This document shows positions 1 through 33,255 of a stretch of DNA of 64,000 nucleotides, piece after piece. Position 1 is the first letter of the stretch; the number at the start of each line of letters is the position of its first letter. Below the pieces are notes generated by a model. It did not search any database. It saw only the letters and a list, made by a program, of their open reading frames with translations, and had not been told where the DNA came from. The position numbers were made by a program, and so were the translations under genes. The stretch is from Macrostomum lignano (taxonomy: Eukaryota): the NCBI GenBank assembly GCA_002269645.1, contig NIVC01002320.1:1-64000 (forward strand), read 5' to 3'.

Positions 1-1184
1 TCGCCAGAGGTTTCCTTTGCAGGGCAGCCGGGTTTACCTGACGTCTGCGTCTGCAAAACTTTCTTTAGCTAAAAATATGCCAGAAAAAAGCATAAGATAA
101 AGAAATTGGATAGATGCTTGCATTGTCAAACCTAAAAATTGTATTGAAGTTACGAACTTAAGTAATAAATTCAGGATTAATATTTATCTAATTACTAATT
201 TACATACGAGTACATGCAATGCATCTAGCAGCCGTATAAAATTTTAGAATAAGATTGCTGTAGTTGACCAAAAAAGGAGGCTAAAAAAAGCTTTTAATAC
301 TCGTACTTCATAATTTCGTGGTTTGCATTTACGAGCGTAAAAGACACTCTAGCACTCTGCATAAACAAAATTATTGATAAAAAGGTCGGTACTGCTGCAA
401 CTCCAGGCAGCTTTCTATATCAACAAGAAGAGAAAGTTCGCAACCGAGCCAGCAGTTTTCACTCCAAAGCACAGCTGCTGCTGCTGCTGTTTCAGTTGCC
501 AAAGGAAATCAAAAACTGAAAGCTGCTCTTCTTCATCAGCTGTCATGGCGCAGCTCTTGGTGCTGAGTGCTCTGTGTGCAGCTCTTTGTGCTCTTGGAGG
601 CGGTGAGTTGTCTGTCTACCCTCAATGTCAGATATATTGTAAGCCTTTATCTCTCACGTGAAAGCGCCTGCTCTCTTACAGCGGCGAGCTCCATCAAGTT
701 CAACATCACGACAACAAACGTCGCGGCTTCCTGGCAGTCGTCGGAATTCGGCAACAGGTGCTTCAGAGACACGGCTGTTCTTGAGCAGTGGGATTACTTT
801 CACACGACGGACACCCCAGACTCTCATGGATACCAGTGGCTGCTCATTAAGCTGTTCCGTGCAATCCGTGTGCAATCAGTCACTGTCTATGGCAGGGCAG
901 CAGGTGAGTTGTCTTGTCCACTTCTGTCTCTTCCGCTTCACTTCTTTCTTACTTCTCTTCTCACTGCAGTGCCCAGCAGAGCACAGAACATCGAGATTCT
1001 GCTGAGTGACAGACTGCCATCGGGTCTGAATACGAGCAGCGATAGTTGCTATGGGACTCTGTCCGGTAGCTTGAGCTCGCTCACTCAGTGCGGAGTCACC
1101 AGAGTGAGCAGACTCAGACTCACAAGGTGGCCTGCAGCTACTCTGGCTGCCCGAATGTGGGTTCATATACTCTGTTGTTACTGA

Positions 1185-1284: not shown

Positions 1285-2100
1285 GGTGGCTAAAACTCAC
1301 GAAATTTCAGCTGACTGAGTACATCTTGCTAAGGAAGAACGTTCGAAACGAGACTTATAAATACTTAAAGTATATTAACTTTCAAGCTCTGGAAGTCGAA
1401 GAAGGTACGACTTTAGTTAAATAAGCTCAATTATGTCTTCACGGGGCATTTTTGACTCTAAACAAACTTTCTCTCTTTCAGCATCTCAGAATGCGCAGAT
1501 TTATAGGTGTGAAGTGTCTGGCGGACGCCTCAGTAACTGCAGACTCAATGCTTTGCAAACTTTGAAAAATGGCGACAGAGCTTGTATGAAAGTCTGCCCA
1601 CCGTGTCAGCTTCCGACAACTGATGCAGCATCTTGTCACATTGCTGCTCCAAGTGGCAGAATCACACAGCTGAGAGTTGTGAGCTCACGGATGAATTTAT
1701 TTCTTTTTAAATGATTTTCACAGACTATTCGACTAAATAATAGGAATAAGTGGAATGAGCAATTATGAATGGTAAAAAATCGTGTTTTTATACGATTTTA
1801 GCCAGTTCCTTAAATTTCTTTCACCATTTTCAGAATGGGCACCCAGACTTCTTTTTAATTGTAATTTTCATACCGACTGCGGAAAGTCAAGGAGGAAACT
1901 TCACGTGCAACTTTAACTGCTCGAGCGATTTGCCTCAGTCAGCAACTGAACCAATCGGTTTCTTTGGTATGCAGTTTTTGTGTGTAATTTTTACCTCAGA
2001 CAGGTGAATTCAAATTAAACTTATAGATTTGAAAAGCAACCTTGTACTATTCAAACTGTTTTAATCTAGGATATTGGTATTTTGCTAGCAGCCTAGCAGC

Positions 2101-2665: not shown

Positions 2666-4384
2666 TGCCAATGGCTAAGCTAATTTTCTGTTGCAGAAGA
2701 GAAGCCCAGAAGTGTCAGCATTGAGCCCAGCAACAGGGTCCAGATTGGATCAAGGATATTTCTGGCTCCAGGCACGGAGTTTCACTTCAGCTTCATCACA
2801 GAAGCTGCGTACCCAAGTCCCATCCATGCTTGCAGGCTGGTGAGAACTGCTGAGCAGGAAACTAAAGAAGATACTTCAGGTGTTCAACTGCATCCATTCA
2901 CAGAGGTGAGAAAATTCTGTGCAATCTTACTACTTTCATTTCCCATTCTGATATTCTCTCATCAAATGCTTTTTCAGAGATCTGTCACTGACGCATCAGC
3001 CAACAAAAGCCATGCAATTACCAAGATCTCAGAGTACAGACTCAGCATTAGCGCACACATGCAAGCAGCTGGGCAAAAGATACAGTGCGTATCGACTGTC
3101 GGTGAAAGCAGTGGAAAAGTGGGGAAATCAATTTCGCTGCCTGAGCTTGTAGGTAAGCAAACTATAGAAGGCGAACACTGGCAGGTGTGATACCTGGAAT
3201 TTCTCACCTAATTCACCTGTCTAATTAGATGAGGATAAGTTGAATTGAAACGATAAAAATTACAGTACAAAGCAAGCCAGAGTTTCTGCTACCGCCAATC
3301 ACGGATTGGAAAGACGGCCACTCCGTCTCAGTTGCTGTCGACTCAACAACAGACAGCTCTGTTTCAACCAGCCACCGCTGCTTGCTGGAGACTCGAGACG
3401 GCAACAGAAGTCTCAACCTTACTCAAGTGAGTCTCGCTTTGGTTTCGTGTCGTTGTGATGTCGGTTTCCAAAACTTAAGACTGTTGCATAAGATTGAGTG
3501 CAAACGTCAGATGAAATTCCTAAGTATGGATTCCTTTTCTTCCATACATGTCCATACACAGGACTTACTTATTCTAGCACGGTAGACTTCTCAAAACGAA
3601 ATTCCAGGGTAAAAATCAACTCAGCACATTCAAAATCAATGTTGATAGACACTGGGGAAACGCAGCCTCTCTGGTCTGTTTGGTAAATCAATCTGGGCTG
3701 ATCCAGACATGGACTCGACATCGGCTACCGAAGGTGCTCTGTGAGTCTCTGATGCCATGACTTTCTTCACAAGCCCATTACTGCATTTGAAGATTAAATC
3801 ACGATTGCATTTTCGAATTCAGACAAGGCCGAAGGGCTGGCCATCCGTATTTCGTCTGGAGACCTGGTGACTGATGAAGAAGCCAGCTTCTCAGTGACTG
3901 CATCTGACTCAGGATACCCAGCGGCTCTGCACCAGTGCAGAATCGAGAGCAAGAGCCTCGGAGAAGACAAGGTATGAGGCTGATGTTATTGCTCATTCAG
4001 AGTTCCCAACCAGCATTTCAATGCTACAATTTCGGCTGACCATTCCGCAGACTGCAGAGTCAGACGGCTCAAGTCACTGGAGATTCACGCCTCAGCGAGG
4101 GCACAACGGTGAACAAATCAGATGCGATGTGGTGCAGAAACTGAGTGGCTCTTTGATATTCAGTCAGACTGTAAACAACTCTAATCTGGAGGTTAAATGT
4201 GAGGCTCATGCTTTATTATGCTGCATGCTGTCATCCCAATCGATGCAGTAGGGCTGCTTGCACTTCAGACAGGGCAATCGTCACGTGGCCCAGCAAAATC
4301 GCTCCGAAAAAGGAAGGCGAGGCTCTGTCATTCGTTGTGCTCGCAGACGGCAACCCAGAGCCCAGCAGTCAGTGCTGGCTGCAG

Positions 4385-4975
4385 CTGGTATCTGGCGCAC
4401 AGGTGAGTCTTTGATTTGGGATGATGCTGGTATCTGGCTCACAGGTGAGTCTTTGATTTGGGATGATGCTGGTATCTGGCTCACAGGTGAGTCTTTGATT
4501 TGGGATGATGCTGGTTTCTGGCTCACAGGTGAGTCTTTGATTTGGGATGATGCTGGTATCTGGCGCACAGGTGAGTCTTTGATTTGGGATGATGCTGGTT
4601 TCTGGCTCACAGGTGAGTCTTTGATTTGGGATGATGCTGGTTTCTGGCTCACAGGTGAGTGTTTGATTCAGGATTGATGCAGGTTTCTGGCGCACAGGTG
4701 AGTCTTTGATTTGGGACTGATGCTGGTTTCTGGCTCACAGGTGAGTCTTTGATTTGGGATGATGCTGGTATCTGGCGCACAGGTGAGTCTTTGATTTGGG
4801 ATGATGCTGCTTTCTGGCGCACAGGTGAGTCTTTGATTTGGGATGATGCTGGTTTCTGGCTCACAGGTGAGTCTTTGATTTGGGATGATGCTGGTTTCTG
4901 CCTCACAGGTGAGTCTTTGATTTGGGAGTGATGCTGGTTTCTGGCTCACAGGTGAGTCTTTGATTTGGGATGATG
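4385..4975 (+). repeat. 42/43-bp minisatellite containing CAG|GTGAGT, intron 12, copy 1 (~14 units)
   Basis: Unit CTGGTTTCTGGCTCACAGGTGAGTCTTTGATTTGGGATGATG; the first unit overlaps the 3' end of exon 12. Confidence 0.95.
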
Positions 4976-7900
4976 TTGCAGTCTCGGTGTTTCATAATAA
5001 TCGCTATTTTCGTTCCAGGTAGACCTGCATAAGCTGAAGCATTCCATGTTTGAGAGCACCTTCAACGTCACTGTTGATAGGTCAATGAACCGAGCCAATT
5101 TGAGCTGTGTTTTGACTCAACCTGGACTTCCATCTTCAACAGAGCAGAGGTTCACCCAATTGATCACAGTTTTTTGTAAGTTTACAGTATCCATTTTCAT
5201 AGGGTTCATAAAGAGGTATACAATTTGTAAATGCGTGCGTATTTTTTGAGCCAATGGAAACATTTCCTGTCGCTTCGGAGGCTCTGAGTTGAAGCACTTC
5301 TTAAATCGAAGACTGAAAAATAATATCGACCCAATCATCCTACAGATCAGCCTCAGCCTCCACTCACCATCGACTTGGCTCAGACTGTCTACGAAGGCAC
5401 CGACGTCACCTTCACGGTGCGGTCGGGCGCTGGAAACCCCAATGTCACCCACAGATGCCACGTGTACAACGGAGAAATTGTGAGCGCAATATTTGCTCAT
5501 CCATTCAACTGACGTGCAGCTTTGATTTAGCATAGAGTTGATCATTTCAGGAAGTTCAAAACAGCATGAAAATCGAATCGGAGTACTTGACAATGGTGAA
5601 CTATGCACCCAACAGTCATGACACATTTGTGAGCTGCACGGCCGAGCAGATGCACCGCTCTGATGTTGTGTTCACCAGCAGCATCAGAAGGAACATCACC
5701 GTAAATTGTGAGAAGTCAAATGCCATTTTATTAGCATGCAGCCTGCCATTTACTTGAAAACCGGAGTATCCACTTTAACTTCAGACTTTGCGCGCAACTC
5801 CATGGACATCAGTCCGACAGACGGAGTTCTTGCTGGAGATCGAGTCGAAGGGACACTCAGATCTCATGGTGGCCGGCCTGCCGTCACGCGTCCTGAGTGT
5901 TCGCTTGGAGGCTCTGAGCTGACTATGGAAAACGTATGCTTTTTCATCACCTGAGTGCTTTTGAATTGAATGTAAACCTTCTTCAGGCAACCTAAATGAT
6001 CAATTTGGGAATTTTCCTACAGTTAACAAGGCGTCCCACCGAAGTGAAGTTCACGTTCCGTGCATCGAAAGAGCACCACGGCAAGGTGCTCGCCTGCAAA
6101 TTCGTACAGGATGAGCGACTGATTGAGTGGAGGAGAGACAAACTCAGCGTCTTCTGTAAGTACAGTTTGAGTTGTTTATTGGTGTGAAAGTATGGGGGTA
6201 TCTTCTACATTGAAAAGTAACTCGTTAAGCCACACTGATGTAAATGTGCACTGCTTTTTCGCACCTGTAGACAAAGCGGATTTCGACTCTGAGGTAAGAA
6301 TCATAAATAGAAAAGTCAGGTGGAACACGACAGTCCAGTTCAGCATCTCCTACTCTGATGTGGGAAACCCGTCCGCCAAGCACTTCTGCCGCATCGGCTC
6401 TCGGCCACTCACCGATGCTGAGGTGCGAAAATACTGACCAACATTTTTGTGCCCGCTTTATGTAAGTAACAAGGTAATTAGAGGTTGTAATGGAAAACAT
6501 CTGGTCAAAATACATTTCAGTCGGTTTCGGCATCACAAAGATTGTTGCGTTGGAAGTTCAAGGCTCAAGTCGGAGACAACGGTCAGAAGATCGTCTGCCA
6601 GGTGGTGCAAAATGATCGACATGGCGGCCTCGTCTTTAACCAAACAGTTGCCAGCCAGACTCTGGATGTGCTCTGTAAAGATTTTGTTTATCAGTTGTAT
6701 TTATTGCTTCAATAGAGCTATTTATATTTATTCCAATATATTGAACCACTTTGACTGTCACAACATTGTTTTCTTAATCTCTATCTTTTCAGACCCAGTC
6801 AGCTACTCAGGATTTCTATCCCAGCCACCGTCGGTGACGGAGGGCGATCCCTTGGTTATTTCTTTCTTTTCAACAGGAGGAAACCCCGAGCCTCGTCACC
6901 GATGCTGGTTGCAGACACCTGCAGGTCGGATGGACGCAGTCGCTCTAACAGAGGCGAGGACAGGTGTGGACCTCGTGACGAGCTTCAGTGTGACTTCCGT
7001 AAAGCAGATGAATGGAGGATCTGTGGTTTGCCGCGTCTCTCAGATGGGCCTCGAGGACCTGGACAAGGATTTCTCCCAGAACATTACTGTTTTCTGTGAG
7101 TTCTCTGTCGCGACTGCTCCAACTTTTATATCAATATAAAATCTAATAGAGGCTTGCAGTGCGTTCGTTTTTCCGTTTGCAGTCCGATCGGAGGTGGATC
7201 TGACCGGCTCAAGGATTTCAGGATCCATTGTGCTCATCAGCATCAATGTGACGGACGGAAACCCGACACCGCTGGTGAACTGCTCGCTGCTCTCGAGCTC
7301 TGGAACTCGACATGTGGGTTCTCAGTGTGCACAGTTGCTCCGCTTCTATTTGCATTGAGTAGCTTTAATGCAGCCGAACCCGTCATTTTAGGAGGTGTCC
7401 AGGAATTACTCGACAATGCTGAAAGTCGGACTGCATGAGATAGAAGTCGATCTGCTTTCAAGAGACCAGCCTCAGTCAGCCAACGTCACGTGTTCTGTGA
7501 AGCAATACTATGCGGGTTTCAAAAGCAGCAGCCTTGTCTTCTTGGCACTCAAAGCTGACGAGAGTTTCCAAGCTAGCGACCAAGAAAGTGAGCAGTTCTG
7601 TTTAGTCCAGCTTAGCTGCATTAATAAACTATTGTCTTTTAAGTTAATCGTATTGTAATGTCTTATCATATTGCTACCATTGTATTATCGCTACAAAAAC
7701 TGATCAATGCAGACCATGGGAGCCTCAGCTGGAATCAAATGTTCCAAATTCTCTGTCTGTGCGCAGTGGTTGGTGTCGCCATCGTTCTGTCCATCTCGCT
7801 GCCTGCCACAGTCTACGTCTGGAGGCGAACTGCATCGCCTCGGTTGGGAATTCAGCGGCAGCACGGAGCAGCCACAGACAGGAGACCAGCTGACGTACCT

Positions 7901-8377
7901 CTGGTCCCTGTGACTGCTGCTGAGCGAGATCTCAATGTAATATTGCTTTTCAGAATTGCTTGCTCATTTTGCTGTTTAATCTGTGTGTGAGGCTGACAAT
8001 CTGTGGGACACTTCAGACCGTCTACTACTATGAGGAGAACCCGGCGCTTCCGGATCGGCCTCCAAGCGTTGAGGAGACGGACTCAAATGTAAGTCTATTG
8101 TCTGCATCTTTGCCAGATGCTCTCAGTGCATGCTCAGTGCAGGATTCAGTTCCGCTCATTGCAGATGGTGCACTGTTCTGAGGAGGAGCAGACGGCTCAG
8201 GGAGCTGTCGAATTCTACGTGCAGTGAAAGTGATTTGCAAGTTGGAGTTTCACTGCTCAGACTCTGTTTTGGAGAAAACGAAACTGCATATATGAGAGTA
8301 TTGGCTGACTGAGCTTGCCTATATAGGCTCTGTTGCGCCGTTTGAAAGTACAACTGAGTGGCACAAAGATTTGGTAG

Positions 8378-12140: not shown

Positions 12141-15100
12141 ATGGTGCAGCTCTTGGCGCTGTGCGCTCTGTGTGCAGCTCTTTGTGCTCTTGGAGGCGGT
12201 GAGTTGTCTGTCTGCCTTCAATGTCAGATTACTGTAAGCCTTCATCACTCATGTGAAGCCCCTGCTCTCTTACAGCGGCGAGCTCCATCAAGTTCAACAT
12301 CACGACAACAAACATCGCGGCTTCCTGGCAGTCGTCAGAATACTTCAACAGGTGCTTCGGAGACACGGCTGTTCTTGAGCAGTGGGATTACTTTCACACA
12401 ACGGACACCCCAGACTCTCATGGATACCAGTGGCTGCTCATTAAGCTGTCCCGTGCAATCCGTGTGCAATCAGTCACTGTCTATGGCAGGGCATCAGGTG
12501 AGTTGTCTTGTCCACTTCTGTCTCTTCCGCTTCACTTCTTTCTTACTTCTCTTCTCACTGCAGAGCCCAGCAGAGCACAGAACATCGAGATTCTGCTGAG
12601 TGACAGACTGCCATCGGGTCTGAATGCGAGCAATGGCAGTTGCAATGGGACTCTGTCCGGTAGCTTGAGCTCGCTCACTCAGTGCGGAGTCACCCAGAGT
12701 GAGCAGACTCAGACTCACAAGGTGGCCTGCAGCTACTCTGACTGCCCGAATGTGGGTTCATCTACTCTTTTGTTGCTGAGTGCAAATAGGTGCAAATAAA
12801 TGGGTAAATCACACGAAATTTCAGGTGACTGAGTACATCTTGCTGAGGAAGAACGTTCGAAACGAATCCGATAAGTATATAAACTTTCAAGCTCTGGAAG
12901 TCGAAGAGGGTACGACTTTAGTTGAATAAAGCTTAATTAAGTCATCATGGGACATTTTTGACTTTAAACAGACTTTCTCTCTTTTCAGCATCTCAGAACG
13001 CGCAGATTTATAGGTGTGAAGTGTCTGGCAGACGCCTCAGTAACTGCAGACTCAATGCTTTGCAAACTTTGAAAAATGGTGACAGAGTTTATATGAAAGT
13101 CTGCCCATCATGTCAGCTTCCGACAACTGATGCAGCATCTTGTCACATTGCTGCTCCAAGTGGCAGAATCACACAGCTGAGAGTTGTGAGCTCACGGATG
13201 AATTTGTTTCTTATTAATTGATTTTCACGGACTATTCGACTAACTAATAGGAATAAGTGGAATGAGCAATTATGAATGGTAACACTTTATTTATAAGATT
13301 TTAGCCAGTTCCTTAAAGTTCTTTCACCATTTTCAGCATGGGCACCCAGACTCCAATTTAATTGTAATTTTCACACTGACTGCGGAAAGTCAAGGAGGAA
13401 ACTTCACGTGCAGCTTTATCTGCTTGAGCGAGTTGCCTCCGTCAGCAACTGAACCAATCGGTTTCTTTGGTATGCAGCTTTTGTGTGACTTTTTACCTTA
13501 GACAGGTGAATTAAAATGAAACTTATAGATTTGTAGAGCAACCTTGTACTATTCAAACTAGTATAATCTAGGGTATTGGTATTTTGCTAGCAGCCTAGCA
13601 GCAGGTGCAGTACAAATGACACCCTAGCAGCAGGTGCAGTACAAATGGCAGCCTAGCAGCAGGTGCAGAACAACTGACACCCTAGCAGCAGGTGCAGAAC
13701 AACTGACACCCTAGCAGCAGGTGCAGAACAACTGACACCCTAGCAGCAGGTGCAGTACAAATGGCACCCTAGATGCAGGTGCAGTACAAATGACACCCTA
13801 GCAGCAGGTGCAGTACAAATGGCAGCCTAGCAGCAGGTGCAGTACAAATGACACCCTAGCAGCAGGTGCAGTACAAATGACGGCCTAGCAGCAGGTGCAG
13901 TACAAAGGACACCCTAGCAGCAGGTGCAGTACAAATGACAGCCTAGCAGCAGGTGGGTCATTCATTCCAAGTTTTGGTGTTCGTTGTGTTGGCTGTTTTA
14001 GGGGTTGGCCTGCGCTGGGGGGTTGGGCACGCTTTTATTCACCTGAACCTATATCGATCGGAATGTACGCGCGTACATAGTGAATGACAAATATATATAT
14101 CGACTAACTTGGCCTTTGAGCCCTCGTACTGATTTTCTCGCAATTCTGGTCTTACACTGGTGGCAGCGAAGCCCAATTCAAGTTGGCAGATCAGAATGGA
14201 AGAGCGAGATGAGAAGAGCAACGACGCCAGTTTGCTACCGCCTAAGTTTAGTGGCCAATCAAACGTGCACTTTTGGCTGAGCATCTTTGAAGACTTCGCC
14301 GAAGACAAGAATTGGGACGATGCAAAGCGTGCCTCCAAAGTGAAGCTCCTGCTGAGAGGGGAGGCCCAGGTCTGTGTTTGGGACATGCCAGATGCCGATA
14401 AAAAGAGTTATGAGAAAATCAAGGCACTTCTTCTCCAGCAGTACGGCGGCTCTGCCAATCAGCACCGCGCCATGCAGGAGTTCCAAGGTCGACAACGAAA
14501 GAATGGCGAGTCAATCAGGGAGCTCTCGTTCGCTCTCAGGCTGCTGTACATGAGAGCCCGCCCGGATGACCCATCAACGCTCCGTGATCGGGAGGTCAAG
14601 TTTAGAATTATCCAGCTATTAAGCGCAGGGATACGCGAAGCCCTGCTCAAGGAGAGCGACTCGGATACATGCACACTGGGCACGCTGGTCGAGAGAGCCA
14701 CCAGACTGGAGCAGGTGATGAGCAAGAACACGCCCGCAAGTTCGTCTATGGTCTCCGTGGTTGACGACCGGCTGTCCCGACTCGAGCAGCAGCTGTAGAC
14801 ACTGACAGCTGCCGTGACAAGCGGCGCCGCTAGAGGAGGCCGCGCTGGACCAGGTGACCGTCGGCAGGCCCAGAGAACATCCGGTTGCTACCAGTGCGGC
14901 AAAGACGGTCACATCGCGCGCAGATGTCCAACTAAAGGTTCCCACAAGCAAGGTCGGTGCTTCAACTGCTCCGGTTGGGGCCACAATGCAGCGGTCTGCC
15001 CAAGTAGGAATAAGCGTAGACCTTATCCTAGGGATGGACTTTATCGGTCGGGCAACCAGCGAGCTACGGATTAACATCAACAACAAGACTGTCTTCTTTA

Positions 15101-18100
15101 ATGATGAGGCCGTGCCGTTTTTCACCAACAGCTCAAAAATTCAAATGGTGACCGGGACGCTGGTGGCCCGCATTGAGTGCAACATCAACGTCCCCGCTAG
15201 GAGTGAGAAGCTGGTCTGGCTGCGAGTGAAGTCAAAAGATGAGCAGGGCGTTTTCGAGCCGAATGCGGAGTTTACTCAAGAGACCGGTCTGCTGGCATCC
15301 CGAGTTCTCGCCTTGTCCGCCGATCAGAGGATTCCCGTTCTCATGTGCAATCTGGGATCCGAGGCAGTAACACTGTATGCCAACAAAGCAGTCGGTGAAT
15401 TCGAAGCTGCTGATGTACTCGAGCCGGTTGGGAACGTGAAGGAGAAACTGAAGAACTGGGACGTGAACCCCGAACTGACAGAGCTAGAAAGAGACAAGCT
15501 GATGACCATCTTGAAAGCCAACGACGACCTGTTCAGCACTCATGAGTTTGACCTCGGCTCCACAAGCGTACTAAAGCACCACATCGAGCTCGAGCCAGGA
15601 GCACGGCCATTCAGGCAGCGCCAGCGCCCTCTCCCCCTGCCGCTGAGGGACCGAGTCGACGACAAGATTGGCCAGATGCTTGCGCACGACATCATTGAGC
15701 CGTCGAGCTCTCCATGGGCCAGCAATTTGATCGTGGTCAAGAAAAAGAACGGAGACATCCGCATCTGCACTGACTGGCGCCAACTGAATGCCGCTACGGT
15801 AAAGGACGCCTATCCGCTCCCACACCTACAACAGTCCATGGACGCGCTCTCAGGCTGCTCTTGGTTCACGACAATCGATTGCAAGCAGGGTTTCAATCAA
15901 GTGGAAGTTGAGGAAGCCGACCGCTACAAGACGGCATTTTACTCTACCAGAGGACTCATGCAGTTCAAGAAAATGGGATTTGGAATGTGCAACTCGCCGG
16001 CTACGTTCCAACGACTAATGGAGCTGATCATGTCTGGCCTCACATGGGAGGAGGTCCTGGTCTACGTGGATGATCTAATAGTGTTCAGTAAGAGCTTTGA
16101 TCAGCATCTAGTCAGCCTTCGACGGGTTTTTGAACGGCTTCGAAGCGCTGGCCTGAAACTGAACAAGGAGAAGTCCGTGTTTGCGTACCGTAGTGTCAAG
16201 TACCTGGGCCATGTGGTCAGCAGCGAAGGAATTCAGCCAGACCCCAGTAAGGTGGAAGCTTTATCGAAGATTAAGACGCCGAGTTCAGCTGAGGAAGTGA
16301 GGCGATTCATCGGCATGCTGGGATTTTACCGGCGATTCATCCAAGACTTCAGCAGGATAGCCGCGCCTCTGCATGCAGCAACGCAAAAGACCGGCTTCAC
16401 CTGGACGGATGAGTGTGAGAGCGCTTTCACCAAACTAAGGGAAAGGATCTGCCAGGCTCCCGTGCTTAGACTACCAGATTTTAGCCGGCCCTTCATCCTG
16501 AGTTGCGATGCAAGCGCATTTGCAGTCGGCGCGGTCCTCAGTCAGGCACACGGAGATTCGGAACTGCCGGTCGCTTTTGCCTCAAGAACTCTGAATAAGG
16601 CAGAAAGGAACTACTCAGCTACCGACAGAGAACTGCTCGCCTTAGTCTGGAGCCTAAAACATTTCAGATCATACCTGTGTAACGTGAAGCACTTCACCGC
16701 GTTCACCGATCATCAGCCACTGAAGGGCCTGCTACAGACTAAGGAACCTGAAGGGCGTCTGGCGCGCTGGCTTGACACGATTCAGCAGTTCAACTTCACG
16801 CTCTGCTATCGGCCTGGTCGAGAGAATGTCGTCCCGGACATGTTGAGTCGAACCGCCACCACTCAGCTCGACAGCAGCAGGGATCAAGACTTCCTAGAGG
16901 AACAGCAGCGCGATGCGCTTCTGCAGAGTGTCTTCAAGGCGCTCACCGAGGGACGCGAGCACCTGTCCAACAGCGGTCAGCAGAAGGTCGAGGAGTTCTT
17001 GGGCGATGACGGAATTGAGATCGGACCGCATGGCGCGCTGGTCAGGCAAGGAAAGCCGGTCGTTCCGAGCCATCTGCGAGCCGAGTTCATGGCCGACGCC
17101 CACGATGCAGCCGCTAGCGGTCACCTCGGCGCGGACAGAACACTACAGAAGTTGCGTGAGCGCTGCTGGTGGCCAAAAATGCAGCAGGATGTCCAGAACT
17201 GGGTCGCCAGCTGTGCAGCATGCCTTCGGCGCAAGAACAATAGTCGCCCTCAGCGAGCTCCACTGCAGAGTACAGCACAGCCGGCGCGACCGTGGGAGAC
17301 CGTGCAAATCGACATTAAGGGGCCGTTGCCAAGGACGCCTCGAGACAACAGCTACATTCTGAGCATCTGCGACTGCTTCTCCAAATGGATGGAAACCCGT
17401 GCTCTACCAAGTATCGAAGCCGAGCGAGTTGCTGATGTTCTGGTCCATCAAGTAGCCCTACGTCACGGAGTTCCGGACACGATTCACAGTGACCAGGGCC
17501 GGCAATTTGAGAGCCAGCTGTTTCAGTCTCTGTGTGAGCAGCTCGGGATGCGGAAGACTCGAACTTCCCCGTTTCATCCGAGTGGCAACGGCCTGGTGGA
17601 GCGCGGAAACCGCACTCTCGGTAACATGTTGGCGACGGTCGTAGCGGAAAGCCAGGACGACTGGGATGTACAGCTGCCTTTTGTCACATGGGCATTCAAC
17701 AGCTCTGCGCACTGTACGACTGGTCTGTCTCCGTTTCAAGTGCTACACGGTTGGCCACCAAGACTGCCGCTTGATGTCAAGCTGCCGCACACCAACAGCG
17801 GCGCTTCGGATACTCTGGACTACGTCGAGGATGTTCAGAAACGGCTTTTGCAGAGTCGGAGGCTCGTCCACCAGAAGCTTCAGAGCGCGCAGACTGAGAG
17901 AAACGAACGATACAACAAGGACGTGCGGTTTCAGCCCTACAACCAAGGCGATCTGGTCATGCTAAGCTGCAAGACAGTGAAGCCTGGTCGCTCCAAGAGC
18001 CTCAGCAACCGCTGGACGGGGCCCTACGTCGTTCTCAAGCGGCTGGGTGAGGTCAACTATCGAGTGCGGCTGGCACCTGGCCTAGCGGTTCGGCGGCGTC

Positions 18101-21100
18101 GCAAGCTCGTGGTGCACCATGACCGCCTCAAGCCATTCGTGAAGCGGCGCGGCTCTCTGCAACTGACCGATGAGCAGCAGCCGGCTCCGGCTACCAGCAC
18201 CAGTCCTGAGCAGCTGGGTGTGCCTGACGCCTGGGCTCAGCTGTCAGGCGGCAATGACGATGACGACGGCGACACCGAAGCAGCAATCGACCCGGTCGTC
18301 CCACCAGCGCTAAGACGTTCGGTACGACAGCGGAGGCCTCCTGATTTTTATCGCCCTGAGTGAACCTTTTTTTGAACTTTTGCCATAGAGTTTTATTCCT
18401 CGTGCTTGGGGGGAAAGTGGTGTGAGTTTTGTTGTTCGTTGTGTTGGCTGTTTTAGGGGTTGGCCTGCGCTGGGGGGTTGGGCACGCTTTTATTTACCTG
18501 AACCTATATCGATCGGAATGTACGCGCGTACATAGTGAATGACAAATATGACAAATATATATATCGACTAACTTGGCCTTTGAGCCCTCGTACTGATTTT
18601 CTCGCAATTCTGGTCTTACAGTCCCATCATGTTTTTTGAACTTTGAGCACTTGTAACTTTCGAGCCATAATAGATAAACAAAGCTGCAAACAGCAATCTG
18701 TGTCAAACTTCTAGTTCTATCTTTTTCACATAGCTGCTTATGAATTCTAAAACAACTGAACACATAGCAGAGGTCAACAGTCAGCATAGTTTATGCTCTG
18801 CTATGTGTTCAGTTGTTTTCCAAGTGCAGTACAAACGGCTGAGCTCATTTTCTGTTGCAGAGGAGAAGCCCAGAAGTGTCAGCATTGAGCCTAGCAACGG
18901 GGTCCAGATTGGATCAAGGATATTTCTGGCTCCAGGCACGGAGTTTCACTTCAATTTCATCACAGAAGCTGCGTACCCAAGTCCCATCCATGCTTGCAGG
19001 CTGGTGAGAACTGCTGAACAGGAAACTAGAGAAGATACTTCAGGTGTTCAACTGCATCCCTTTACAGAGGTGAGAACATCGAGTGCAATCTTAATACTTT
19101 CATTTCCAATTCTGATATTCTCATCAAATGATTTTTCAGAGATCCTTTAATGACGCCTCAGCAAACAAAAGCCATGCAATTACCAAGATCTCACAGTATA
19201 GGCTCAGCATTAGCGCACACATGCAAGCAGCTGGGCAAAAGATACAGTGCGTGTCGGCTGTCGGTGAAAGCAGTGGAAAATCGGTGAAATCAATTTCACT
19301 GTCTGAGCTTGTAGGTAAGCAAAATATTGGAGTGAGAGTACTGGCAGGTGATACATGGAATTTATCATGTTAGATGAAGATGAGTTGTATTGAAATGATT
19401 AAAAATTGCAGTACCAAGCAAGCCGGAGTTTCTGCTAGCGCCAATCACGGATTGGACAGATGGCCACTCCGTCTCAGTTGCTGTCGACTCAACAACAGAC
19501 AGCGCTGTTCCAACCAGCCACCGCTGCTTGCTGGAGACTCGAGACGGCAACAGAAGTCTCAACGCTACTCAAGTGAGTCTTGCTTTGGTTTTATGCCGTC
19601 GTGATGTTGGTTTAGAAAGCAAAAACTTTGGCAAAATATTGAATGCTTTTCATCAAATGTCAAATATTTGACAAACGTCATGGGCTGCTGAAGTGATTCA
19701 TTCGGTGTTCTAAGCATGAGCATGTTTACTTTCTTTGAATAAATACGAAGTTGCTAAATTGCTAAAAATTTCGAGTAGTTCTCTTAAAAATTTCCTGTAG
19801 TAACTCTGAATCAGTCCATGAGTGTGTGTACAGGACTATCCTTCTCCCTCGGTAGAGACTTCTCAAATCGAAATTCCAGGTAACATATAAAAGCAGTAAA
19901 TTCGAGTTGGATGTTGATAGGCACTGGGGAAGCGCAGCCTCTCTGGTCTGTTTGGTAAATCAGTCTGGGCTGATCCAGACATGGACTCGACATCGGCTAC
20001 CGAAGGTGCTCTGTGAGTCTCTGATGCCATGACTTTCTTCACAAGCCTATTACTGCATTTGAAGATTAAGTCACAATTGCATTTTCGAATTCAGACAAGG
20101 TCGAAGGGCTGGCCATCCGTATTTTATCAGGAGACCTGGTGAGTGATGAAGAAGCCAGCTTCTCAGTGACTGCATCTGACTCAGGATACCCAACGGCTCT
20201 GCACCAGTGCAGAATCGAGAGCAAGAGCCTCGGAGAAGACAAGGTATGAGGCTGATGTTATTGCTCAATCAGAATTCCCAACCAGCATTTCAATGCTCCA
20301 ATTTCGGTTGACCATTCCGCAGACTGCAGAGTCAGACGGCTCAACTCACTGGAGATTCACGCCTCAGCGAGGGCACAACGGTGAACAAATCAGATGCGAT
20401 GTGGTGCAGAAACTGAGTGGCTCTTTGATATTCAGTCAGACTGTCAACAGCTCTAATCTGGATATTAAATGTGAGGCTCATGCTTTAATCTGCTGCATGC
20501 TGTCATCCCCATCGATACAGTAGGGCTGCTTGCACTTCAGACAAGGCAACTGTCACGTGGCCCAGAAATATCGCTCCGAAAAAGGAAGGCGAGGCTCTGT
20601 CATTCGTTGTGCTCGCAGACGGCAACCCAGAGCCCAGCAGTCAGTGCTGGCTGCAGCTGGTATCTGGCGCACAGGTGAGTCTTTGATTTGGGATGATGCT
20701 GGTATCTGGCTCACAGGTGAGTCTTTGATTTGGGATGATGCTGGTATCTGGCTCACAGGTGAGTCTTTGATTTGGGATGATGCTGGTTTCTGGCTCACAG
20801 GTGAGTCTTTGATTTGGGATGATGCTGGTTTCTGGCTCACAGGTGAGTCTTTGATTTGGGAGTGATGCTGGTTTTTGGCTCACAAGTGAGTCTTTGATTT
20901 GGGAGTGATGATAGTTTCTGGCTCACAGGTGAGTCTTTGATTTGGGAGTGATGCTGGTTTCTGGCTCACAGGTGAGTCTTTGATTTGGGAGTGATGAGTG
21001 ATGCTGCTTTCTGGCTCACAGGTTACTCTTTGATTTTTGAGTGATGCTGGTTTCTGGCTCACAGGTGAGTCTTTGATTTGGGAGTGATGAGTGATGCTGG

Positions 21101-24100
21101 TTTCTGGCTCACAGGTGAGTCTTTGATTTGGGAGTGATGAGTGATGCTGGTTTCTGGCTCACAGGTGAGTCTTTGATTTGGGAGTGATGAGTGATGCTGC
21201 TTTCTGGCTCACAGGTGAGTCTTTGATTTGGGAGTGATGCTGGTCTCTGGCTCACAGGTGAGTCTTTGATTTGGGAGTGATGAGTGATGCTGCTTTCTGG
21301 CTCACAGGTTACTCTTTGATTTGGGAGTGATGAGTGATGCTGGTTTCTGGCGCACAGGTGAGTCTTTGATTTGGGAGTGATGAGTGATGCTGGTTTCTGG
21401 CTCACAGGTGAGTCTTTGATTTGGGAGTGATGCTGCAGTCTCGGTGTTTCATAATAATCGCTATTCTCGTTCCAGGTACACCTGCATAAGCTGAAGCATT
21501 CCATGTTTGAGAGCACCTTCAACGTCACTGTTGATAGGTCAATGAACCGAGCCAATTTGAGCTGTGTTTTGACTCAACCTGGACTTCCATCCTCAACGGA
21601 GCAGAGCTTCACCCAATTGATCACAGTATTTTGTAAGTTTACAGTATCCATTTTCATAGGGTTCATAAAGAGGTATACAATTTGTAAATGCGTGCGTATT
21701 TTTTGAGCCAATGGAGACATTTCCTGTCGCTTCGGAGGCTCTGGCCTGAAGCACTTCTTAACTCGTAGACTGAAAAATAATATCGACCCAACCATCCTAC
21801 AGATCAGCCTCAGCCTCCACTCTCCATCGACTTGGCTCAGACTGTCTACGAAGGCACCGACGTCACCTTCACGGTGCGGTCGGGCGCTGGAAACCCCACC
21901 GTCACCCACAGATGCCACGTGTACAACGGAAAAGTTGTGAGCGCAATATTTGCCCATCCATTCAACTGACGTGCAGCTTTGATTTAGCATAGAGTTGATC
22001 ATTCCAGGAAGTTCAAAACAGCATGAAAATCGAATCGGAGTACTTGACAATGGTGAACTATGCACCCAACAGTCATGACACATTTGTGAGCTGCACGGCC
22101 GAGCAGATGCACCGCTCTGATGTTGTGTTCACCAGCAGCATCAGAAGGAACATCACCGTAAATTGTGAGAAGTCAAATGCTATTTTATTAGCATGCAGCC
22201 TGCCATTGACTTGAAAAACGGAGTATCCACTTTAACTTCAGACTTTGCGCACAACTCCATGGGCATCAGTCCGACAGACGGAGTTCTTGATGGAGATCGA
22301 GTCGAAGTGACACTCAAATCTTATGGTGGCCGGCCTGCCGTCACTCAGCATGAGTGTTCGCTTGGCGGCCCTGAGCTGACTATGGAAAACGTATGCTTTT
22401 TTATCACCTGAGTGCTTTTGAATTGACTGTGAACCTTCTTCAGGCATCCTAATTGATCAATTTGGGAATTTTTCTACAGGTAACAAGGCGTCCCACCGAA
22501 GTGAAGTTCACGTTTCGTGCATCGAAAGAGCATGACGGCAAGGTGCTCGCCTGCAAATTCGTCCAGGATGAGCGACTGATTGAGTGGAAGAAAACCAATC
22601 TCAGCGTTTTCTGTAGGAGAAAATGAAGCAATATTTTTCACGTCTTTTCGCTTTTTGTTTGCAAATGCATGTACACTTCACATTCACTTTTCGTACCTTT
22701 AGACAAAGCGGCTGTCGACTCTGAGGTGCAAACCTTAAAGAGAAAAGTCAGGTGGAACACGACAGTCCAGTTCAGCATCTCCTACTCTGATGTGGGAAAC
22801 CCGTCCGCCAAGCACTTCTGCCGCATCGGCTCTCGGCCACTCACCGATCCTGAGGTGCGAAAATGCTGGCACATCTCTGTGTCTGCTTTGTGTAAGTAAC
22901 AAGGTATTAGAGATTACATGTATAATGGAAACATCTGGTCAAAATACATTTCAGTCAGTTTCAACATTACAATCGGTTTGGAAGTTCAAGGCTCAAGTCG
23001 GAGACAACGGTCAGAAGATCGTCTGCCAGGTGGTGCAAGATGATCGACATGGCGGCCGAGTCTTTAACCAAACAGTTGCCAGCCAGAGTCTGGATGTGCT
23101 CTGTAAAGATTTTGTTTATCAGTTGTATTTATTGCTTCAATAGAGCTATTTATATTTATTCCAATATATTGAACCACTTTGACTGTCACAACATTGTTTT
23201 CTTAATCTCTATCTTTTCAGACCCAGTCAGCTACTCAGGATTTCTATCCCAGCCACCGTCGGTGACGGAGGGCGATCCCTTGGTTATTTCTTTCTTATCA
23301 ACAGGAGGAAACCCCGAGCCTCGTCACCGATGCTGGTTGCAGACACCTGCAGATCGGATGGATGCAGTCGCTCTAACACAGGCGAGGACAGGTGTGGTCC
23401 TTTTCATGACGAACTTCAGTGAGACTTCTGTAAAGCAGATGAATGGAGGATCTGTGGTTTTCCGCGTCTCTCAGATGGGCCTCGAGGACCTGGACAAGGA
23501 TTTCTCCCAGAACATTACTGTTTTCTGTGAGTTCTCTGTCGCGACTGCTCCAATTTTATATCAATATAAAATCTAATAGAGGCTTGCAGTGCGTTCGTTT
23601 TTCCGTTTGCAGTCCGATCGGAGGTGGGTCTGACCGGCTCAAGGTTTTCAGGAGCCACTGTGGTCCTCAGCATCAATGTGAAGGACGGAAACCCGACACC
23701 GCTGGTGAACTGCTCGCTGCTCTCGGGTTCTGGAACTCGACATGTGGGTTTTCACTGTGCACAGTTGCTCCACTTCTATTTGCATTGAGTAGCTTTAATG
23801 CAGCTGAACCCGTCATTTTAGGAGGTTGCCAGGAATGACTCGACATTGCTGAGAGTCGGACTCCATGAGATACCAGTAGAAGTCGATCTGCTTTCAAGAG
23901 ACCAGCGTCAGTCAGCCAACGTCACGTGTTCTGTAAAGCAAGACTATGCGGGTTTCAAAAACAGCAGCCTTGTCTTCTTGGCACTCAAAGCTGACGAGAG
24001 TTTTCAAGCTAGCGACCAAGAAAGTGAGCAAGTCTGTGTAGTCCAGCTTTGCTGCATTCGTCTTTCTAAACTCTAAAAATAATCGCATCACTTTGTCTCA

Positions 24101-32237: not shown

Positions 32238-32316
32238 GTGCAAATAGGTGCAAATAGGTGCAAATAGGTGCAAATAGGTGCAAATAGGTGCAAATAGGTG
32301 CAAATAGGTGCAAATA
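32238..32316 (+). repeat. 10-bp repeat (GTGCAAATAG)n, intron 3, copy 3 (~8 units)
   Basis: Directly visible. Confidence 0.95.
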
Positions 32317-33106
32317 AATGGGTAAATCACACGAAATTTCAGCTGACTGAGTACATCTTGCTAAGGAAGAACGTTCGAAACGAATCTGATAAGTACATGA
32401 ACTTTCAAGCTCTGGAAGTCGAAGAGGGTACGACTGTAGTTGAATAAAGCTTAATTAAGTCTTCATGGGACATTGTTGACTCTAAACAGACTTTCTCTCT
32501 TTCAGCATCTCAGAATGCGCAGATTTATAGGTGTGAAGTGTCTGGCAGACACCTCAGTAACTGCAGACTCAATGCTTTGCAAACTTTGAAAAATGGTGAC
32601 AGAGTTTATATGAAAGTCTGCCCATCATGTCAGCTTCCGACAATTGATGCAGCATCTTGTCGCATTGCTGCTCCAAGTGGCAATATCACACAGCTGAGAG
32701 TTGTGAGCTCACGGATGAATTTATTTCTTTTTTAATGATTTTCACAGGCTATTTGACTAAATAATAGGAATAAGTGGAATGAGCAATTATGAATGTTAAC
32801 AGTTTATTTTTTATACGATTTTAGTCAGTTCATTAATGTTCTTTCACCATTTTCAGAATGGGCACCCAGACTCCAATTTAATTGTGATTTTCACATCGAC
32901 TGCGGAAAGTCAAGGAGGAAACTTCACGTGCAACTTCAACTGCTCGAGCGAGTTGTCTCAGTCAGCGACTGAACCGATCGGTTTCTTTGGTATGCAGCTT
33001 TTGTGTGTACTTTTTACCTTAGACAGGTGAATTCAAATGAAACTTATAGATTTGTAGAGCAACCTTGTACTATTCAAACTGTTTTAATCTAGGGTATTGG
33101 TATTTT

Positions 33107-33255
33107 GCTAGCAGCCTAGCAGCAGGTGCAGTACAAATGGCAGCCTAGCAGCAGGTGCAGTACAAATGACAGCCTAGCAGCAGGTGCAGTACAACTGGCA
33201 CCCTAGCAGTAGGTGCAGTACAAACGGCAGCCTAGCAGCAGGTGCAGTACAAACG
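33107..33255 (+). repeat. 29-bp minisatellite, intron 5, copy 3 (~5 units)
   Basis: Directly visible. Confidence 0.9.

What the first reader, a model, noticed from the sequence alone, without database searches (positions are those of the whole stretch)
2697..7587. Nine consecutive Ig domains swap the canonical B-F disulfide for a C-F (CD4-D2-like) cysteine pair
Seen: in Ig2-Ig10 the B-strand Cys of the nephrin-type motif L-x-C-x-S-x-G-G-x-P is replaced by a hydrophobic residue (ISFFSTGGNP, FTVRSGAGNP, FVVLADGNP). A Cys sits where the core Trp should be, often after His (PEPRHRCW, PNVTHRCH, PSAKHFCR, PAALHQCR, PSPIHACR, TSHRCL). The F-strand Cys is kept (QIRCDV, KIVCQV, NLSCVL). Known: CD4 domain 2 has this rare arrangement, a strained, redox-labile cross-strand C-F disulfide. 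Inference: a whole stalk of such domains could be a distinct Ig subfamily and possibly a redox-tunable receptor.
Basis: partly seen in the sequence, partly recalled or inferred. Interest (0 to 1): 0.75.

Follow-up and report, generated by a model that had tools for sequence, protein, structure and literature searches.

The report
Flatworm receptor with rewired Ig disulfides
Four tandem genes of the flatworm Macrostomum lignano encode a membrane receptor whose nine-domain immunoglobulin stalk has lost the usual core disulfide and tryptophan in every domain and instead carries a cysteine pair on two neighbouring strands, an arrangement otherwise known mainly from domain 2 of human CD4; this shows the Ig fold's most conserved core can be rewired across a whole gene family, though the bond itself and any redox role are still untested.

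Summary
Window 2697-7587 is 17 exons of a 26-exon gene (545-8227) of Macrostomum lignano, present as four tandem paralogs. The exons encode nine C2-set-type Ig domains. In 35 of 36 domain copies there are exactly two Cys, and these are the only invariant columns. Profile alignments to solved SYG-2 and nectin-4 domains put the first Cys on the canonical strand-C Trp, a V/F/L/I residue on the canonical strand-B Cys, and the second Cys on the strand-F Cys. Residue periodicity puts both Cys on the core-facing side. An AlphaFold model (pLDDT 85) puts them on strands C and F of an Ig sandwich.

An exhaustive HMM search finds the same signature (G-N-P...H-x-C-[W/R]-L ... C-x-V-x-Q) in about 48 non-redundant domains. 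All the named proteins among them come from M. lignano. Domains from other organisms have Trp at that column.

The N-terminal head resembles an F-type (fucose-binding) lectin (FBP32, E=1.7e-6). So this is a lineage-specific lectin-headed IgSF receptor family with a CD4-D2-like C-F cysteine pair. There is no specific homology to CD4. The disulfide itself, its strain and any redox switching were not tested; the tools return no coordinates.

The parts
545..602 (+). Copy 1, exon 1: start codon and signal peptide (MAQLLVLSALCAALCALGG)
   Evidence: matches the N-termini of P0005/P0155
682..1404 (+). Copy 1, exons 2-4 (682-903, 970-1155, 1311-1404): F-type-lectin-like head domain. A 1-nt deletion in a C-run between 1098 and 1099 shifts the frame relative to copies 2-4.
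   Evidence: Head profile A3 hits the F-type lectin FBP32 (3cqo), E=1.7e-6; exon mapping; deletion
1482..1966 (+).
   Evidence: no Pfam or PDB hit; AlphaFold pLDDT below 50
2697..3152 (+). Ig2 (exons 2697-2905, 2978-3152); Cys codons 2831-2833 (strand C) and 3086-3088 (strand F); long insert after strand C
3266..3740 (+). Ig3 (exons 3266-3426, 3608-3740); Cys codons 3379-3381 and 3677-3679
3823..4198 (+). Ig4 (exons 3823-3971, 4051-4198); Cys codons 3936-3938 and 4123-4125
4269..5175 (+). Ig5 (exons 4269-4402, 5019-5175); Cys codons 4373-4375 and 5106-5108. The intron holds a 42-bp minisatellite (4384-4975) that starts inside the exon and repeats its splice donor.
   Evidence: best match to nectin-4 D2
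5346..5707 (+). Ig6 (exons 5346-5479, 5551-5707); Cys codons 5456-5458 and 5635-5637
5785..6155 (+). Ig7 (exons 5785-5933, 6023-6155); Cys codons 5898-5900 and 6095-6097
6271..6674 (+). Ig8 (exons 6271-6422, 6521-6674); Cys codons 6387-6389 and 6596-6598
6793..7095 (+). Ig9 (single exon); Cys codons 6903-6905 (C37, strand C) and 7029-7031 (C79, strand F); this is the modelled domain
   Evidence: AlphaFold pLDDT 85.4, strands 19-26 / 33-40 / 76-83; Foldseek finds an Ig fold
7183..7587 (+). Ig10 (exons 7183-7313, 7392-7587); Cys codons 7281-7283 and 7491-7493; membrane-proximal
7713..8227 (+). Copy 1, 3' exons (7713-7909 transmembrane helix and juxtamembrane part; 8017-8088 with YYYEENPAL; 8165-8227 ending in the stop codon)
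12141..24633 (+). Copy 2 (head 12141-13469; stalk 18861-24023; tail to 24633). Ig9 strand-F Cys is replaced by Phe (TTC, 23460-23462). Intron 6 is enlarged by an LTR-retrotransposon-like insert.
31598..39165 (+). Copy 3 (stalk 33279-38531). In-frame TAG at 38360-38362 in exon 10b, upstream of the TM exon.
43035..52603 (+). Copy 4 (stalk 45245-51973). 42-nt in-frame deletion in exon 6 at 44925/44926. The Ig5 intron minisatellite is expanded to about 54 units (47064-49395).

Best explanation
The finding is the stalk of a type-I membrane receptor of the flatworm Macrostomum lignano. The gene has 26 exons and is present as four young tandem paralogs.

Architecture: signal peptide; F-type-lectin-like head; an eight-Cys module; nine C2-set Ig domains; one transmembrane helix; a short tyrosine-containing tail.

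In every stalk domain the canonical Ig 'pin' has been rewired. Normally this pin is a strand-B to strand-F disulfide capped by the strand-C Trp. Here the B position is an aliphatic or aromatic residue and the Trp position is Cys. That Cys lies directly across from the retained F-strand Cys in the same GFC sheet.

The most likely role of the pair is a buried, intrasheet cross-strand disulfide that staples strands C and F in each domain. That would be a structural substitute for the lost intersheet bond, and geometrically of the CD4-D2 type.

The receptor as a whole most likely holds a glycan-recognising head about nine Ig domains away from the membrane, for recognition or adhesion. It belongs to a Macrostomum-specific, rapidly evolving birth-and-death gene family.

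Shown: gene structure, domain family, positions and register of the cysteines, family-wide conservation, restricted taxonomic distribution, similarity of the head to an F-type lectin.

Inferred: that the two Cys are actually bonded, that the bond is mainly structural, and the ligand and biological role.
For: - Organism and family: the only homologs are M. lignano proteins.
- Gene model: consensus AG/GT sites, a phase-1/phase-0 pattern, and junctions matching the UniProt models. All 26 exons are present in four copies.
- Ig identity: Pfam C2-set_2 at 35.1 bits over the stalk, against a cut-off of 21. The profile hits SYG-2, nectin-4, Necl-4 and CD22. AlphaFold Ig9 has pLDDT 85.4 and pTM 0.73. 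The Foldseek top hits are SYG-1/SYG-2, titin, Necl-4 and MyBP-C.
- Rewiring: in the ungapped profile alignment to SYG-2 D3, family Cys1 falls on Trp, column 23 (V/F) on the B-Cys, and Cys2 on the F-Cys. Nectin-4 D2 also has Cys1 on its Trp and Cys2 on its F-Cys, with its B-Cys falling as an insert one residue after column 23.
- Periodicity: columns 19/21/23, 36/38 and 73/75/77 are the buried register.
- Model: C37 lies in strand 33-40 and C79 in strand 76-83. These strands are equal in length and consistent with a register that puts 37 opposite 79.
- Geometry from the literature: the Trp (3550) and F-Cys (8550) anchors are lateral backbone neighbours in the GFCC' sheet (PMC12051499).
- Pairing: all 55 full-length family domain matches carry both Cys. 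They are the only invariant columns and are 100% conserved in 48 non-redundant domains.
- Head: the profile built with the divergent paralog P0042 hits FBP32 (3cqo) at E=1.7e-6 over about 100 residues.
- Birth-and-death evolution: dS is 0.06-0.10 and omega about 0.6. Each copy has one blemish.
Against: - No coordinates were available, so the S-S distance, chi angles and bonding state are unmeasured.
- A single-sequence alignment of Ig5 and Ig9 prefers to align the Trp that follows the Cys with the canonical Trp. That would put the Cys one residue off and facing outward.
- Only one of the nine domains was modelled.
- Copy 2 tolerates loss of the Ig9 F-strand Cys. Together with omega of about 0.6 and defects in copies 1 and 3, this means some copies may be decaying, so conservation among the four copies is uninformative.
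- The head gets no Pfam hit. It lacks the acidic residue of the fucose motif and the DG calcium motif. Its AlphaFold model is unusable (pLDDT 40). Glycan binding is therefore not assured.
- No expression or functional data were found.
Confidence: 0.68

Rival explanations
1. Redox or mechanical switch. The nine C-F bonds are strained, CD4-D2-like allosteric disulfides. Extracellular thioredoxin/PDI-type reductants or force would open them, loosening the GFC sheet and allowing domain swapping, oligomerisation or a change in stalk stiffness that signals through the tail.
For: The arrangement matches CD4 D2: Cys on strands C and F, none on B. The CD4 D2 bond is buried yet reduced by thioredoxin and linked to domain-swapped dimers (PMC3352085; PMC4354306). 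A conserved His two residues before the Cys lies on the same face (77% of domains) and could tune thiol chemistry.
Against: Nothing here measures strain or lability. A bond present in every domain of every family member looks more like a structural solution than a regulatory one. CD4 has it in only one of its four domains. There is no homology to CD4 D2.
Confidence: 0.17
2. The cysteines are not a disulfide pair within one domain. Either they are free or metal-binding thiols (an H-x-C...C site), or the first Cys faces outward (Cys at Trp-1) and forms interdomain or intermolecular bonds.
For: The phmmer alignment of Ig5/Ig9 aligns the following Trp, not the Cys, with the canonical Trp. His-x-Cys is conserved. 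Copy 2's Ig9 keeps the first Cys without the second.
Against: The profile alignments are ungapped and place Cys on Trp. The position after the Cys is variable and often charged, while Cys+2 is always L/I/V, so the Cys is in the buried register. There are exactly two Cys per extracellular domain, and they co-occur in 55 of 55 domains. The model puts them on adjacent antiparallel strands of equal length.
Confidence: 0.08
3. The array in this window is a cluster of decaying pseudogenes, so the cysteine pattern has no present function here.
For: Copy 1 has a frameshift, copy 3 a premature stop, copy 2 a lost Cys and a retrotransposon in an intron, and copy 4 a 42-nt deletion. Omega is about 0.6.
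Against: All 104 exons (26 in each of four copies) are retained, and all splice sites in copies 1 and 4 are intact. Omega is below 1. The copy 1 change is a 1-nt difference in a C-run and could be an assembly error. Intronic transposons and in-frame deletions do not inactivate a gene. A stop before the TM exon could give a secreted form. The signature is conserved in far more divergent paralogs such as P0042, which has a complete ORF.
Confidence: 0.07

Closest known systems
Human CD4 domain 2 (Cys130-Cys159 cross-strand disulfide)
   Same: An Ig domain with no strand-B Cys. It has one Cys on strand C at the core-facing position opposite the strand-F Cys, so the pair lies within the GFC sheet. 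Hydrophobic residues replace the B-Cys. The motif C-x-V-x-Q follows the F-strand Cys.
   Different: There is no detectable homology (hhalign probability 3.5%). CD4 has the arrangement in one domain of four, whereas here it is in all nine domains and in a whole gene family. The flatworm domains are longer, with a mid-domain intron and a G-N-P / H-x-C signature. Redox lability is shown for CD4 and untested here.
CD80-like C2-set Ig domains (Pfam C2-set_2): nectin/Necl D2, SYG-2/nephrin, CD276
   Same: These are the best sequence and structure matches. They share the G-x-P-x-P B-C loop, the E-F region and the F-strand Cys.
   Different: Those domains keep the canonical B-F disulfide and the strand-C Trp. 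The flatworm domains have neither. Individual domains mostly score below the Pfam threshold.
F-type lectins (fucolectins: eel AAA, striped bass FBP32) and FTLD-containing membrane proteins such as Drosophila furrowed
   Same: The head matches the FBP32 C-terminal FTLD over about 100 residues. It has a His and an Arg-x5-Arg pair in the corresponding region. FTLDs are known fused to other modules and to TM segments, and they occur in planarians (PMC5712786).
   Different: No Pfam hit. The spacing is H-x30-R rather than H-x24-R. There is no acidic residue after the first Arg and no h2DGx calcium motif. None of the architectures in that review's domain-organisation figure legend (Figure 1) combines an FTLD with Ig domains.
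Siglec V-set domains (intrasheet B-E disulfide) and other Ig domains with non-canonical disulfides
   Same: They are precedents showing that an Ig domain can replace the intersheet bond with an intrasheet one.
   Different: Different strands are linked (B-E rather than C-F). Siglecs keep this in a single N-terminal domain.
Mollusc FREPs (lectin-like head plus IgSF domains, diversified multigene families)
   Same: A lophotrochozoan multigene family that combines a carbohydrate-recognition-type domain with IgSF domains and is tandemly expanded (PMC7588048, listed).
   Different: [quoted passage not shown] Here the head is N-terminal and F-type-like, there are nine Ig domains with C-F cysteines, and the protein is membrane-anchored. 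No immune role is shown here.

Membership tests
Immunoglobulin superfamily, C2-set (Pfam C2-set_2) | Significant sequence match to the family model | tested here: met
   The whole stalk scores 35.1 bits against a cut-off of 21, E=1.4e-8. Single domains are weaker: 6 of 18 match at E<=1, best 0.002. The profile hits SYG-2 at E=4.5e-6.
Immunoglobulin superfamily, C2-set (Pfam C2-set_2) | Ig beta-sandwich fold | tested here: met
   AlphaFold Ig9 has pLDDT 85.4 and eight strands. Foldseek finds 81 PDB matches at E<=1e-3 (all 50 listed are Ig domains), TM 0.6-0.75. Only one of the nine domains was modelled.
Immunoglobulin superfamily, canonical core (the CCW signature) | Strand-B Cys bonded to strand-F Cys | tested here: not met
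   The B column is F/V/L/I in 9 of 9 domains and never Cys in 48 family domains.
Immunoglobulin superfamily, canonical core (the CCW signature) | Conserved Trp on strand C packing on the disulfide | tested here: not met
   The column is Cys in 100% of family domains. It is Trp in 76 of 123 domains from other organisms.
CD4-D2-type Ig domain with a C-F cross-strand disulfide | Cys on strand C directly opposite the strand-F Cys, both core-facing, with no B-strand Cys | tested here: met
   Profile alignment to solved structures, periodicity, strand assignment in the model, and adjacency of the Trp and F-Cys anchors from PMC12051499.
CD4-D2-type Ig domain with a C-F cross-strand disulfide | The two Cys are actually disulfide-bonded, with strained (-RHStaple) geometry | not testable with these tools
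   Structure prediction returns no coordinates, so no S-S distance or chi angles can be obtained.
CD4-D2-type Ig domain with a C-F cross-strand disulfide | Reducible by thioredoxin or PDI with a functional consequence | not testable with these tools
   This needs a biochemical experiment. It is known for CD4 only (PMC3352085).
CD4-D2-type Ig domain with a C-F cross-strand disulfide | Sequence homology to CD4 D2 | tested here: not met
   hhalign probability 3.5% with 27 aligned columns. CD4 is absent from the PDB profile hits and from the 50 best Foldseek matches listed.
F-type lectin domain (FTLD) | Sequence similarity to a solved FTLD | tested here: met
   Head profile A3 against FBP32 (3cqo): E=1.7e-6, best stretch at profile positions 18-116. 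No Pfam family passes, even at E<=10.
F-type lectin domain (FTLD) | Fucose-binding motif H-X24-R-X-D-X4-(R/K) | tested here: not met
   A conserved His (YFHT/YFHS) and R-x5-R (GRAAVPSR; RPGELKR in P0042) are present. However, the spacing is about H-x30-R and the acidic residue is absent (motif definition from PMC5712786). This was read by eye from the alignments.
F-type lectin domain (FTLD) | Calcium-binding motif h2DGx | tested here: not met
   The stretch aligned to FBP32 'AIDGN' is 'FRDTA' / 'MMRPR', with no DG.
F-type lectin domain (FTLD) | F-type jelly-roll fold | tested here: inconclusive
   The AlphaFold model of the head has mean pLDDT 40.2. It is predicted all-beta but is unusable for fold search.

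The most novel reading that the evidence does not exclude
A lineage-specific Ig subfamily has replaced the fold's universal core pin (B-F disulfide plus Trp) by a CD4-D2-like strained cross-strand disulfide in every domain. As a result, a nine-domain receptor stalk becomes a redox- or force-gated element: reduction would unlock the C-F sheet, allow domain swapping or oligomerisation, and couple lectin-head engagement to signalling. This would be the first natural 'all-allosteric-disulfide' Ig stalk. It would also be a natural experiment on how an Ig domain folds without the CCW core.
Probability: 0.12. Interest if true: 0.8.

Novelty: new variant of a known kind. Interest (0 to 1): 0.55.

Why it matters
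The B-F disulfide and the strand-C Trp are the most conserved features of classical Ig domains and are thought to guide folding and stabilise the core (PMC12051499). A C-F intrasheet bond was known essentially as a curiosity of CD4 domain 2, where it acts as an allosteric disulfide of medical interest.

A whole expanded gene family that uses this alternative wiring in every domain shows it to be a stable, heritable solution for the Ig fold and not a one-off. The family offers dozens of natural sequences for studying cross-strand disulfide chemistry and Ig folding. It also defines an uncharacterised lectin-headed receptor family in a genetically tractable regenerating flatworm.

On the practical side, standard Ig models recognise these domains poorly, and the existing gene models are fragmentary or chimeric. 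The family is therefore under-annotated.

Tried and rejected
- My first guess was a teleost gene, from the GC content and split Ig exons. I rejected it: every homolog is from Macrostomum lignano.
- I considered that the 'extra' Cys at each domain end (ITVFC, EVKC) might be a third cysteine. It is the T|GTAAGT splice donor read through and is not part of the protein.
- Cys at Trp-1: rejected on the profile alignments and on periodicity.
- Specific homology to CD4 D2: tested and not found.
- Structure of the head plus eight-Cys module: the AlphaFold model was too poor (pLDDT 40), so I ran no fold search on it.
- Pfam, NCBI-style names and single-sequence PDB search for the head: nothing. A word-based homolog search with the head found only near-identical paralogs.
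- Spread outside Macrostomum: P0047 is an unnamed ENA genomic fragment that is read through the same intron and donor as the family gene, so it is a family member. P0056 is a bacterial-looking repeat protein with only 8-14 bits per repeat and is probably analogous. P0124 is a bacterial chance hit.
- Conservation of the Cys among the four paralogs as evidence: rejected as uninformative, because the copies differ by only about 5% at non-synonymous sites.
- Literature searches for this family, for flatworm lectin-Ig receptors and for other C-F Ig domains found nothing relevant.

Full report
**What is in the window.**
ORFs are short and interrupted, so this is a spliced eukaryotic gene. Splice-site scoring gives a regular pattern: each module is bounded by phase-1 introns, and eight of the nine also have a phase-0 intron in mid-domain. 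The finding's limits, 2697 and 7587, are exactly an acceptor and a donor.

The apparent extra Cys at the end of each module ('ITVFC', 'EVKC') is the donor T|GTAAGT read through. It is not part of the protein.

The spliced product of 2697-7587 is 17 exons encoding nine modules of 93-127 residues.

**Organism and gene.**
A search of 5.8 billion proteins returns only five relatives, all annotated as Macrostomum lignano 'Ig-like domain-containing protein'. Their sequences confirm my junctions and corrected the start of Ig3.

With them as guides, the complete gene has 26 exons (copy 1: 545-8227):
- signal peptide;
- a head of about 165 aa;
- an eight-Cys module;
- nine Ig modules;
- a transmembrane helix;
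- a tail containing YYYEENPAL, followed by the stop codon.

The gene is present four times in tandem (545-8227, 12141-24633, 31598-39165, 43035-52603), and all 26 exons are retained in each copy. The copies are young and moderately constrained: dS is 0.06-0.10 and dN/dS about 0.6.

Each copy has one blemish:
- Copy 1: a 1-nt deletion in a C-run at 1098/1099.
- Copy 2: the Ig9 F-strand Cys is changed to Phe (23460-23462), and a retrotransposon sits in intron 6.
- Copy 3: a TAG at 38360-38362.
- Copy 4: a 42-nt in-frame deletion in exon 6.

**Are the modules Ig domains?**
Yes. The evidence:
- Pfam gives C2-set_2 (CD80-like) at 35.1 bits over the stalk, against a cut-off of 21. Single domains are weak.
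- A profile of the domains (A1) hits the solved structures of SYG-2 (the C. elegans nephrin homologue, from my own knowledge), CD276, nectin-4, Necl-4 and CD22.
- An AlphaFold model of Ig9, built on the alignment of the paralogous domains, is confident (pLDDT 85.4, pTM 0.73) and all-beta.
- Foldseek against the PDB returns Ig domains throughout the 50 matches it lists: SYG-1/2, titin, Necl-4 and MyBP-C, with TM 0.6-0.75.

**The cysteine pattern.**
Every module of copy 1 has exactly two Cys, as do 35 of the 36 modules in the window. In the alignment of domains that share only 14-33% identity, the two Cys are the only invariant columns.

The key question is the register of the first Cys. A single-sequence alignment aligned the Trp that follows the Cys in Ig5 and Ig9 with the canonical Trp. 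That would put the Cys one residue off and facing outward. Three independent results argue against this.

1. The family profile aligns without gaps to SYG-2 D3. Family Cys1 falls on the Trp, column 23 (V/F) on the B-strand Cys, and Cys2 on the F-strand Cys. Nectin-4 D2 also puts Cys1 on its Trp and Cys2 on its F-strand Cys; its B-strand Cys falls as an insert one residue after column 23.
2. Among the domains of non-Macrostomum proteins retrieved by the exhaustive HMM search, the Cys1 column is Trp in 76 of 123 and the Cys2 column is Cys in 114 of 123.
3. Residue periodicity. Columns 19/21/23 (strand B), 36/38 (strand C) and 73/75/77 (strand F) are the hydrophobic, buried register. The residue after Cys1 is variable and often charged (W, R, H, S, L), while Cys1+2 is always L/I/V.

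The model places C37 in the third main strand (33-40), after strand B (19-26), and C79 in strand 76-83. These two strands are equal in length, and as antiparallel partners they would put 37 opposite 79.

The IgStrand paper states that the G, F, C and C' anchors form one lateral stretch of backbone-backbone interactions, and that these anchors include the F-strand Cys and the C-strand Trp (PMC12051499). A Cys at the Trp position is therefore the direct cross-strand neighbour of the F-strand Cys. This is the geometry of the Cys130-Cys159 bond of CD4 domain 2 (PMC4354306). That bond is inward-pointing and buried, yet is reduced by thioredoxin (PMC3352085).

I could not measure the S-S distance, because the structure tool returns no coordinates.

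**A distinct subfamily.**
A full HMMER scan of 1.84 billion representative proteins with profile A1 finds only 133 proteins at E<=1e-3. I classified their domains by the three key columns.

The scan gives 55 full-length 'C-F' domains, meaning Cys at the Trp column, Cys at the F column and none on strand B; seven more carry a strand-B Cys as well. Within the M. lignano family, all 55 domain matches that cover both columns have both Cys.

Every named protein among them is from M. lignano. They span more than a dozen clusters at 50% identity, with varied N-terminal parts.

The best hit that a source names from another organism, Saccoglossus hemicentin, is canonical. One unnamed ENA fragment (P0047) is a genomic read-through of the same intron and donor, so it is a family member. 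One metagenomic protein (P0056) looks bacterial and is only weakly similar.

Over 48 non-redundant domains the signature is:
G16 ... [V/F]23 ... S25 ... G-N-P(28-30) ... H34 (77%)-x-C36 (100%)-[W/R]-[L/I/V]38 ... [I/V/L]73-x-C75 (100%)-x-V77-x-Q79 (77%).

There is no specific similarity to CD4 D2 (hhalign probability 3.5%), so the resemblance is convergent.

**The head.**
The head gets no Pfam or single-sequence PDB hit, and its AlphaFold model is unusable (pLDDT 40).

The divergent full-length paralog P0042 (PAA49974.1) has the same architecture. A profile of both heads hits the F-type lectin FBP32 (3cqo) at E=1.7e-6 over about 100 residues.

I compared the head with the published motifs, H-X24-R-X-D-X4-(R/K) and h2DGx (PMC5712786). 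The head keeps a His and an Arg-x5-Arg pair. It lacks the acidic residue and the calcium motif, and its spacing is longer. It is therefore F-type-lectin-like, but sugar binding is not assured.

**Interpretation.**
The most economical reading is a lineage-specific, fast-evolving family of type-I receptors: a lectin-like head on a long Ig stalk. In the stalk domains the intersheet disulfide and its Trp cap have been replaced by an intrasheet C-F cross-strand disulfide that staples the GFC sheet.

The bond is present in every domain of every member, which favours a structural role. A CD4-like redox or mechanical switch is possible but untested. Ligand and biological role are inferred from the architecture alone.

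No literature on this family was found.

**Verdict.**
The redox tuning is open.
- It is a new variant of a known kind. It is of moderate interest to people who work on the Ig fold and on disulfide chemistry, and it is limited by being confined, so far, to one species and by the absence of experimental data.

Noticed in passing
window 14160-18363 (+), inside intron 6 of gene copy 2: GC-rich (54-56%) insert with a 212-aa Gag-like ORF and an intact 1169-aa Pol-like ORF. From my reading of the translation, the Pol carries protease, reverse-transcriptase, RNase H and integrase motifs. This looks like an apparently young LTR retrotransposon. It accounts for the extra 5 kb between the head and the stalk of copy 2. 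I did not analyse the sequence further.
   Followed up: partly
window 4384-4975, 20656-21435, 35112-35938, 47064-49395: A 42/43-bp minisatellite starts inside exon 5a and repeats the last ~19 nt of the exon together with its splice donor (CACAG|GTGAGT) in every unit. Copy number ranges from 14 (copy 1; a 42-bp period, so the frame stays open) to about 54 (copy 4). It could offer many alternative donors.
   Followed up: partly
window 2458-2673, 13594-13955, 33111-33257, 45106-45223: A 29-bp minisatellite (TGCAGTACAAATGACACCCTAGCAGCAGG) lies just upstream of the acceptor of the first stalk exon in copies 1, 3 and 4. In copy 2 it lies at the start of the enlarged intron. Copy number varies from 4 to 12.5.
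   Followed up: no
window 43677-44353 (and a short version near 1160-1300): A 10-bp repeat (GTGCAAATAG) of about 65 units sits in the head-domain intron of copy 4. The homologous intron of copy 1 holds only a few units.
   Followed up: no
window 1098/1099; 23460-23462; 38360-38362; 44925/44926: Each paralog has one lesion: a 1-nt deletion (copy 1), Cys to Phe at the Ig9 F strand (copy 2), a TAG stop before the TM exon (copy 3), and a 42-nt in-frame deletion that removes one Cys of the eight-Cys module (copy 4). They may be real decay, a secreted isoform in the case of copy 3, or assembly errors.
   Followed up: yes
window 58547-59448 (+) and 62739-63640 (-): A roughly 0.9-kb inverted duplication. 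The ORFs on the two strands are identical, and each arm carries a block of a 20-bp tandem repeat in opposite orientation (59043-59159 / 63028-63144). An 80-bp repeat lies between the arms (60446-60813). This could be a foldback element or an assembly artefact.
   Followed up: no
window about 56000-59000: Low-complexity sequence with a GC skew down to -0.57 over 56-58 kb. Its + strand translations are rich in Ser, Leu and Pro. It is not coding by any test made here.
   Followed up: no
window 8017-8088 and homologous exons 24423-24494, 38955-39026, 52400-52471: The cytoplasmic motif TVYYYEENP(A/T)LPDRPPSVEETD is conserved in all four copies. From my own knowledge, the tyrosines followed by EEN resemble pY-x-N / pYEE SH2-docking sites. 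This was not tested.
   Followed up: no
protein P0018 (M. lignano, UniRef A0A1I8HRG2), not in the window: This paralog has four Cys per Ig domain: an extra one near strand A and one at the canonical strand-B position, in addition to the C-F pair (for example ACNF...NFTCTS...QHRCEL...IECSVQ). It may be an evolutionary intermediate, or it may carry a second disulfide.
   Followed up: partly
proteins P0001-P0005, P0008 (UniProt models of this locus type): The public gene models are truncated or chimeric. For example, P0004 starts with the tail of one gene and continues into the head of the next, and it skips exons. This is probably because the tandem array and the minisatellite introns confuse gene prediction.
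   Followed up: partly
protein P0056 (JGI metagenome, 905 aa), not in the window: A bacterial-looking surface protein with about seven repeats. Each repeat has two Cys at positions that align weakly with the C and F columns (SPSCLVNG ... PINCTLHQ). This is probably an analogous two-Cys beta-sandwich repeat.
   Followed up: partly
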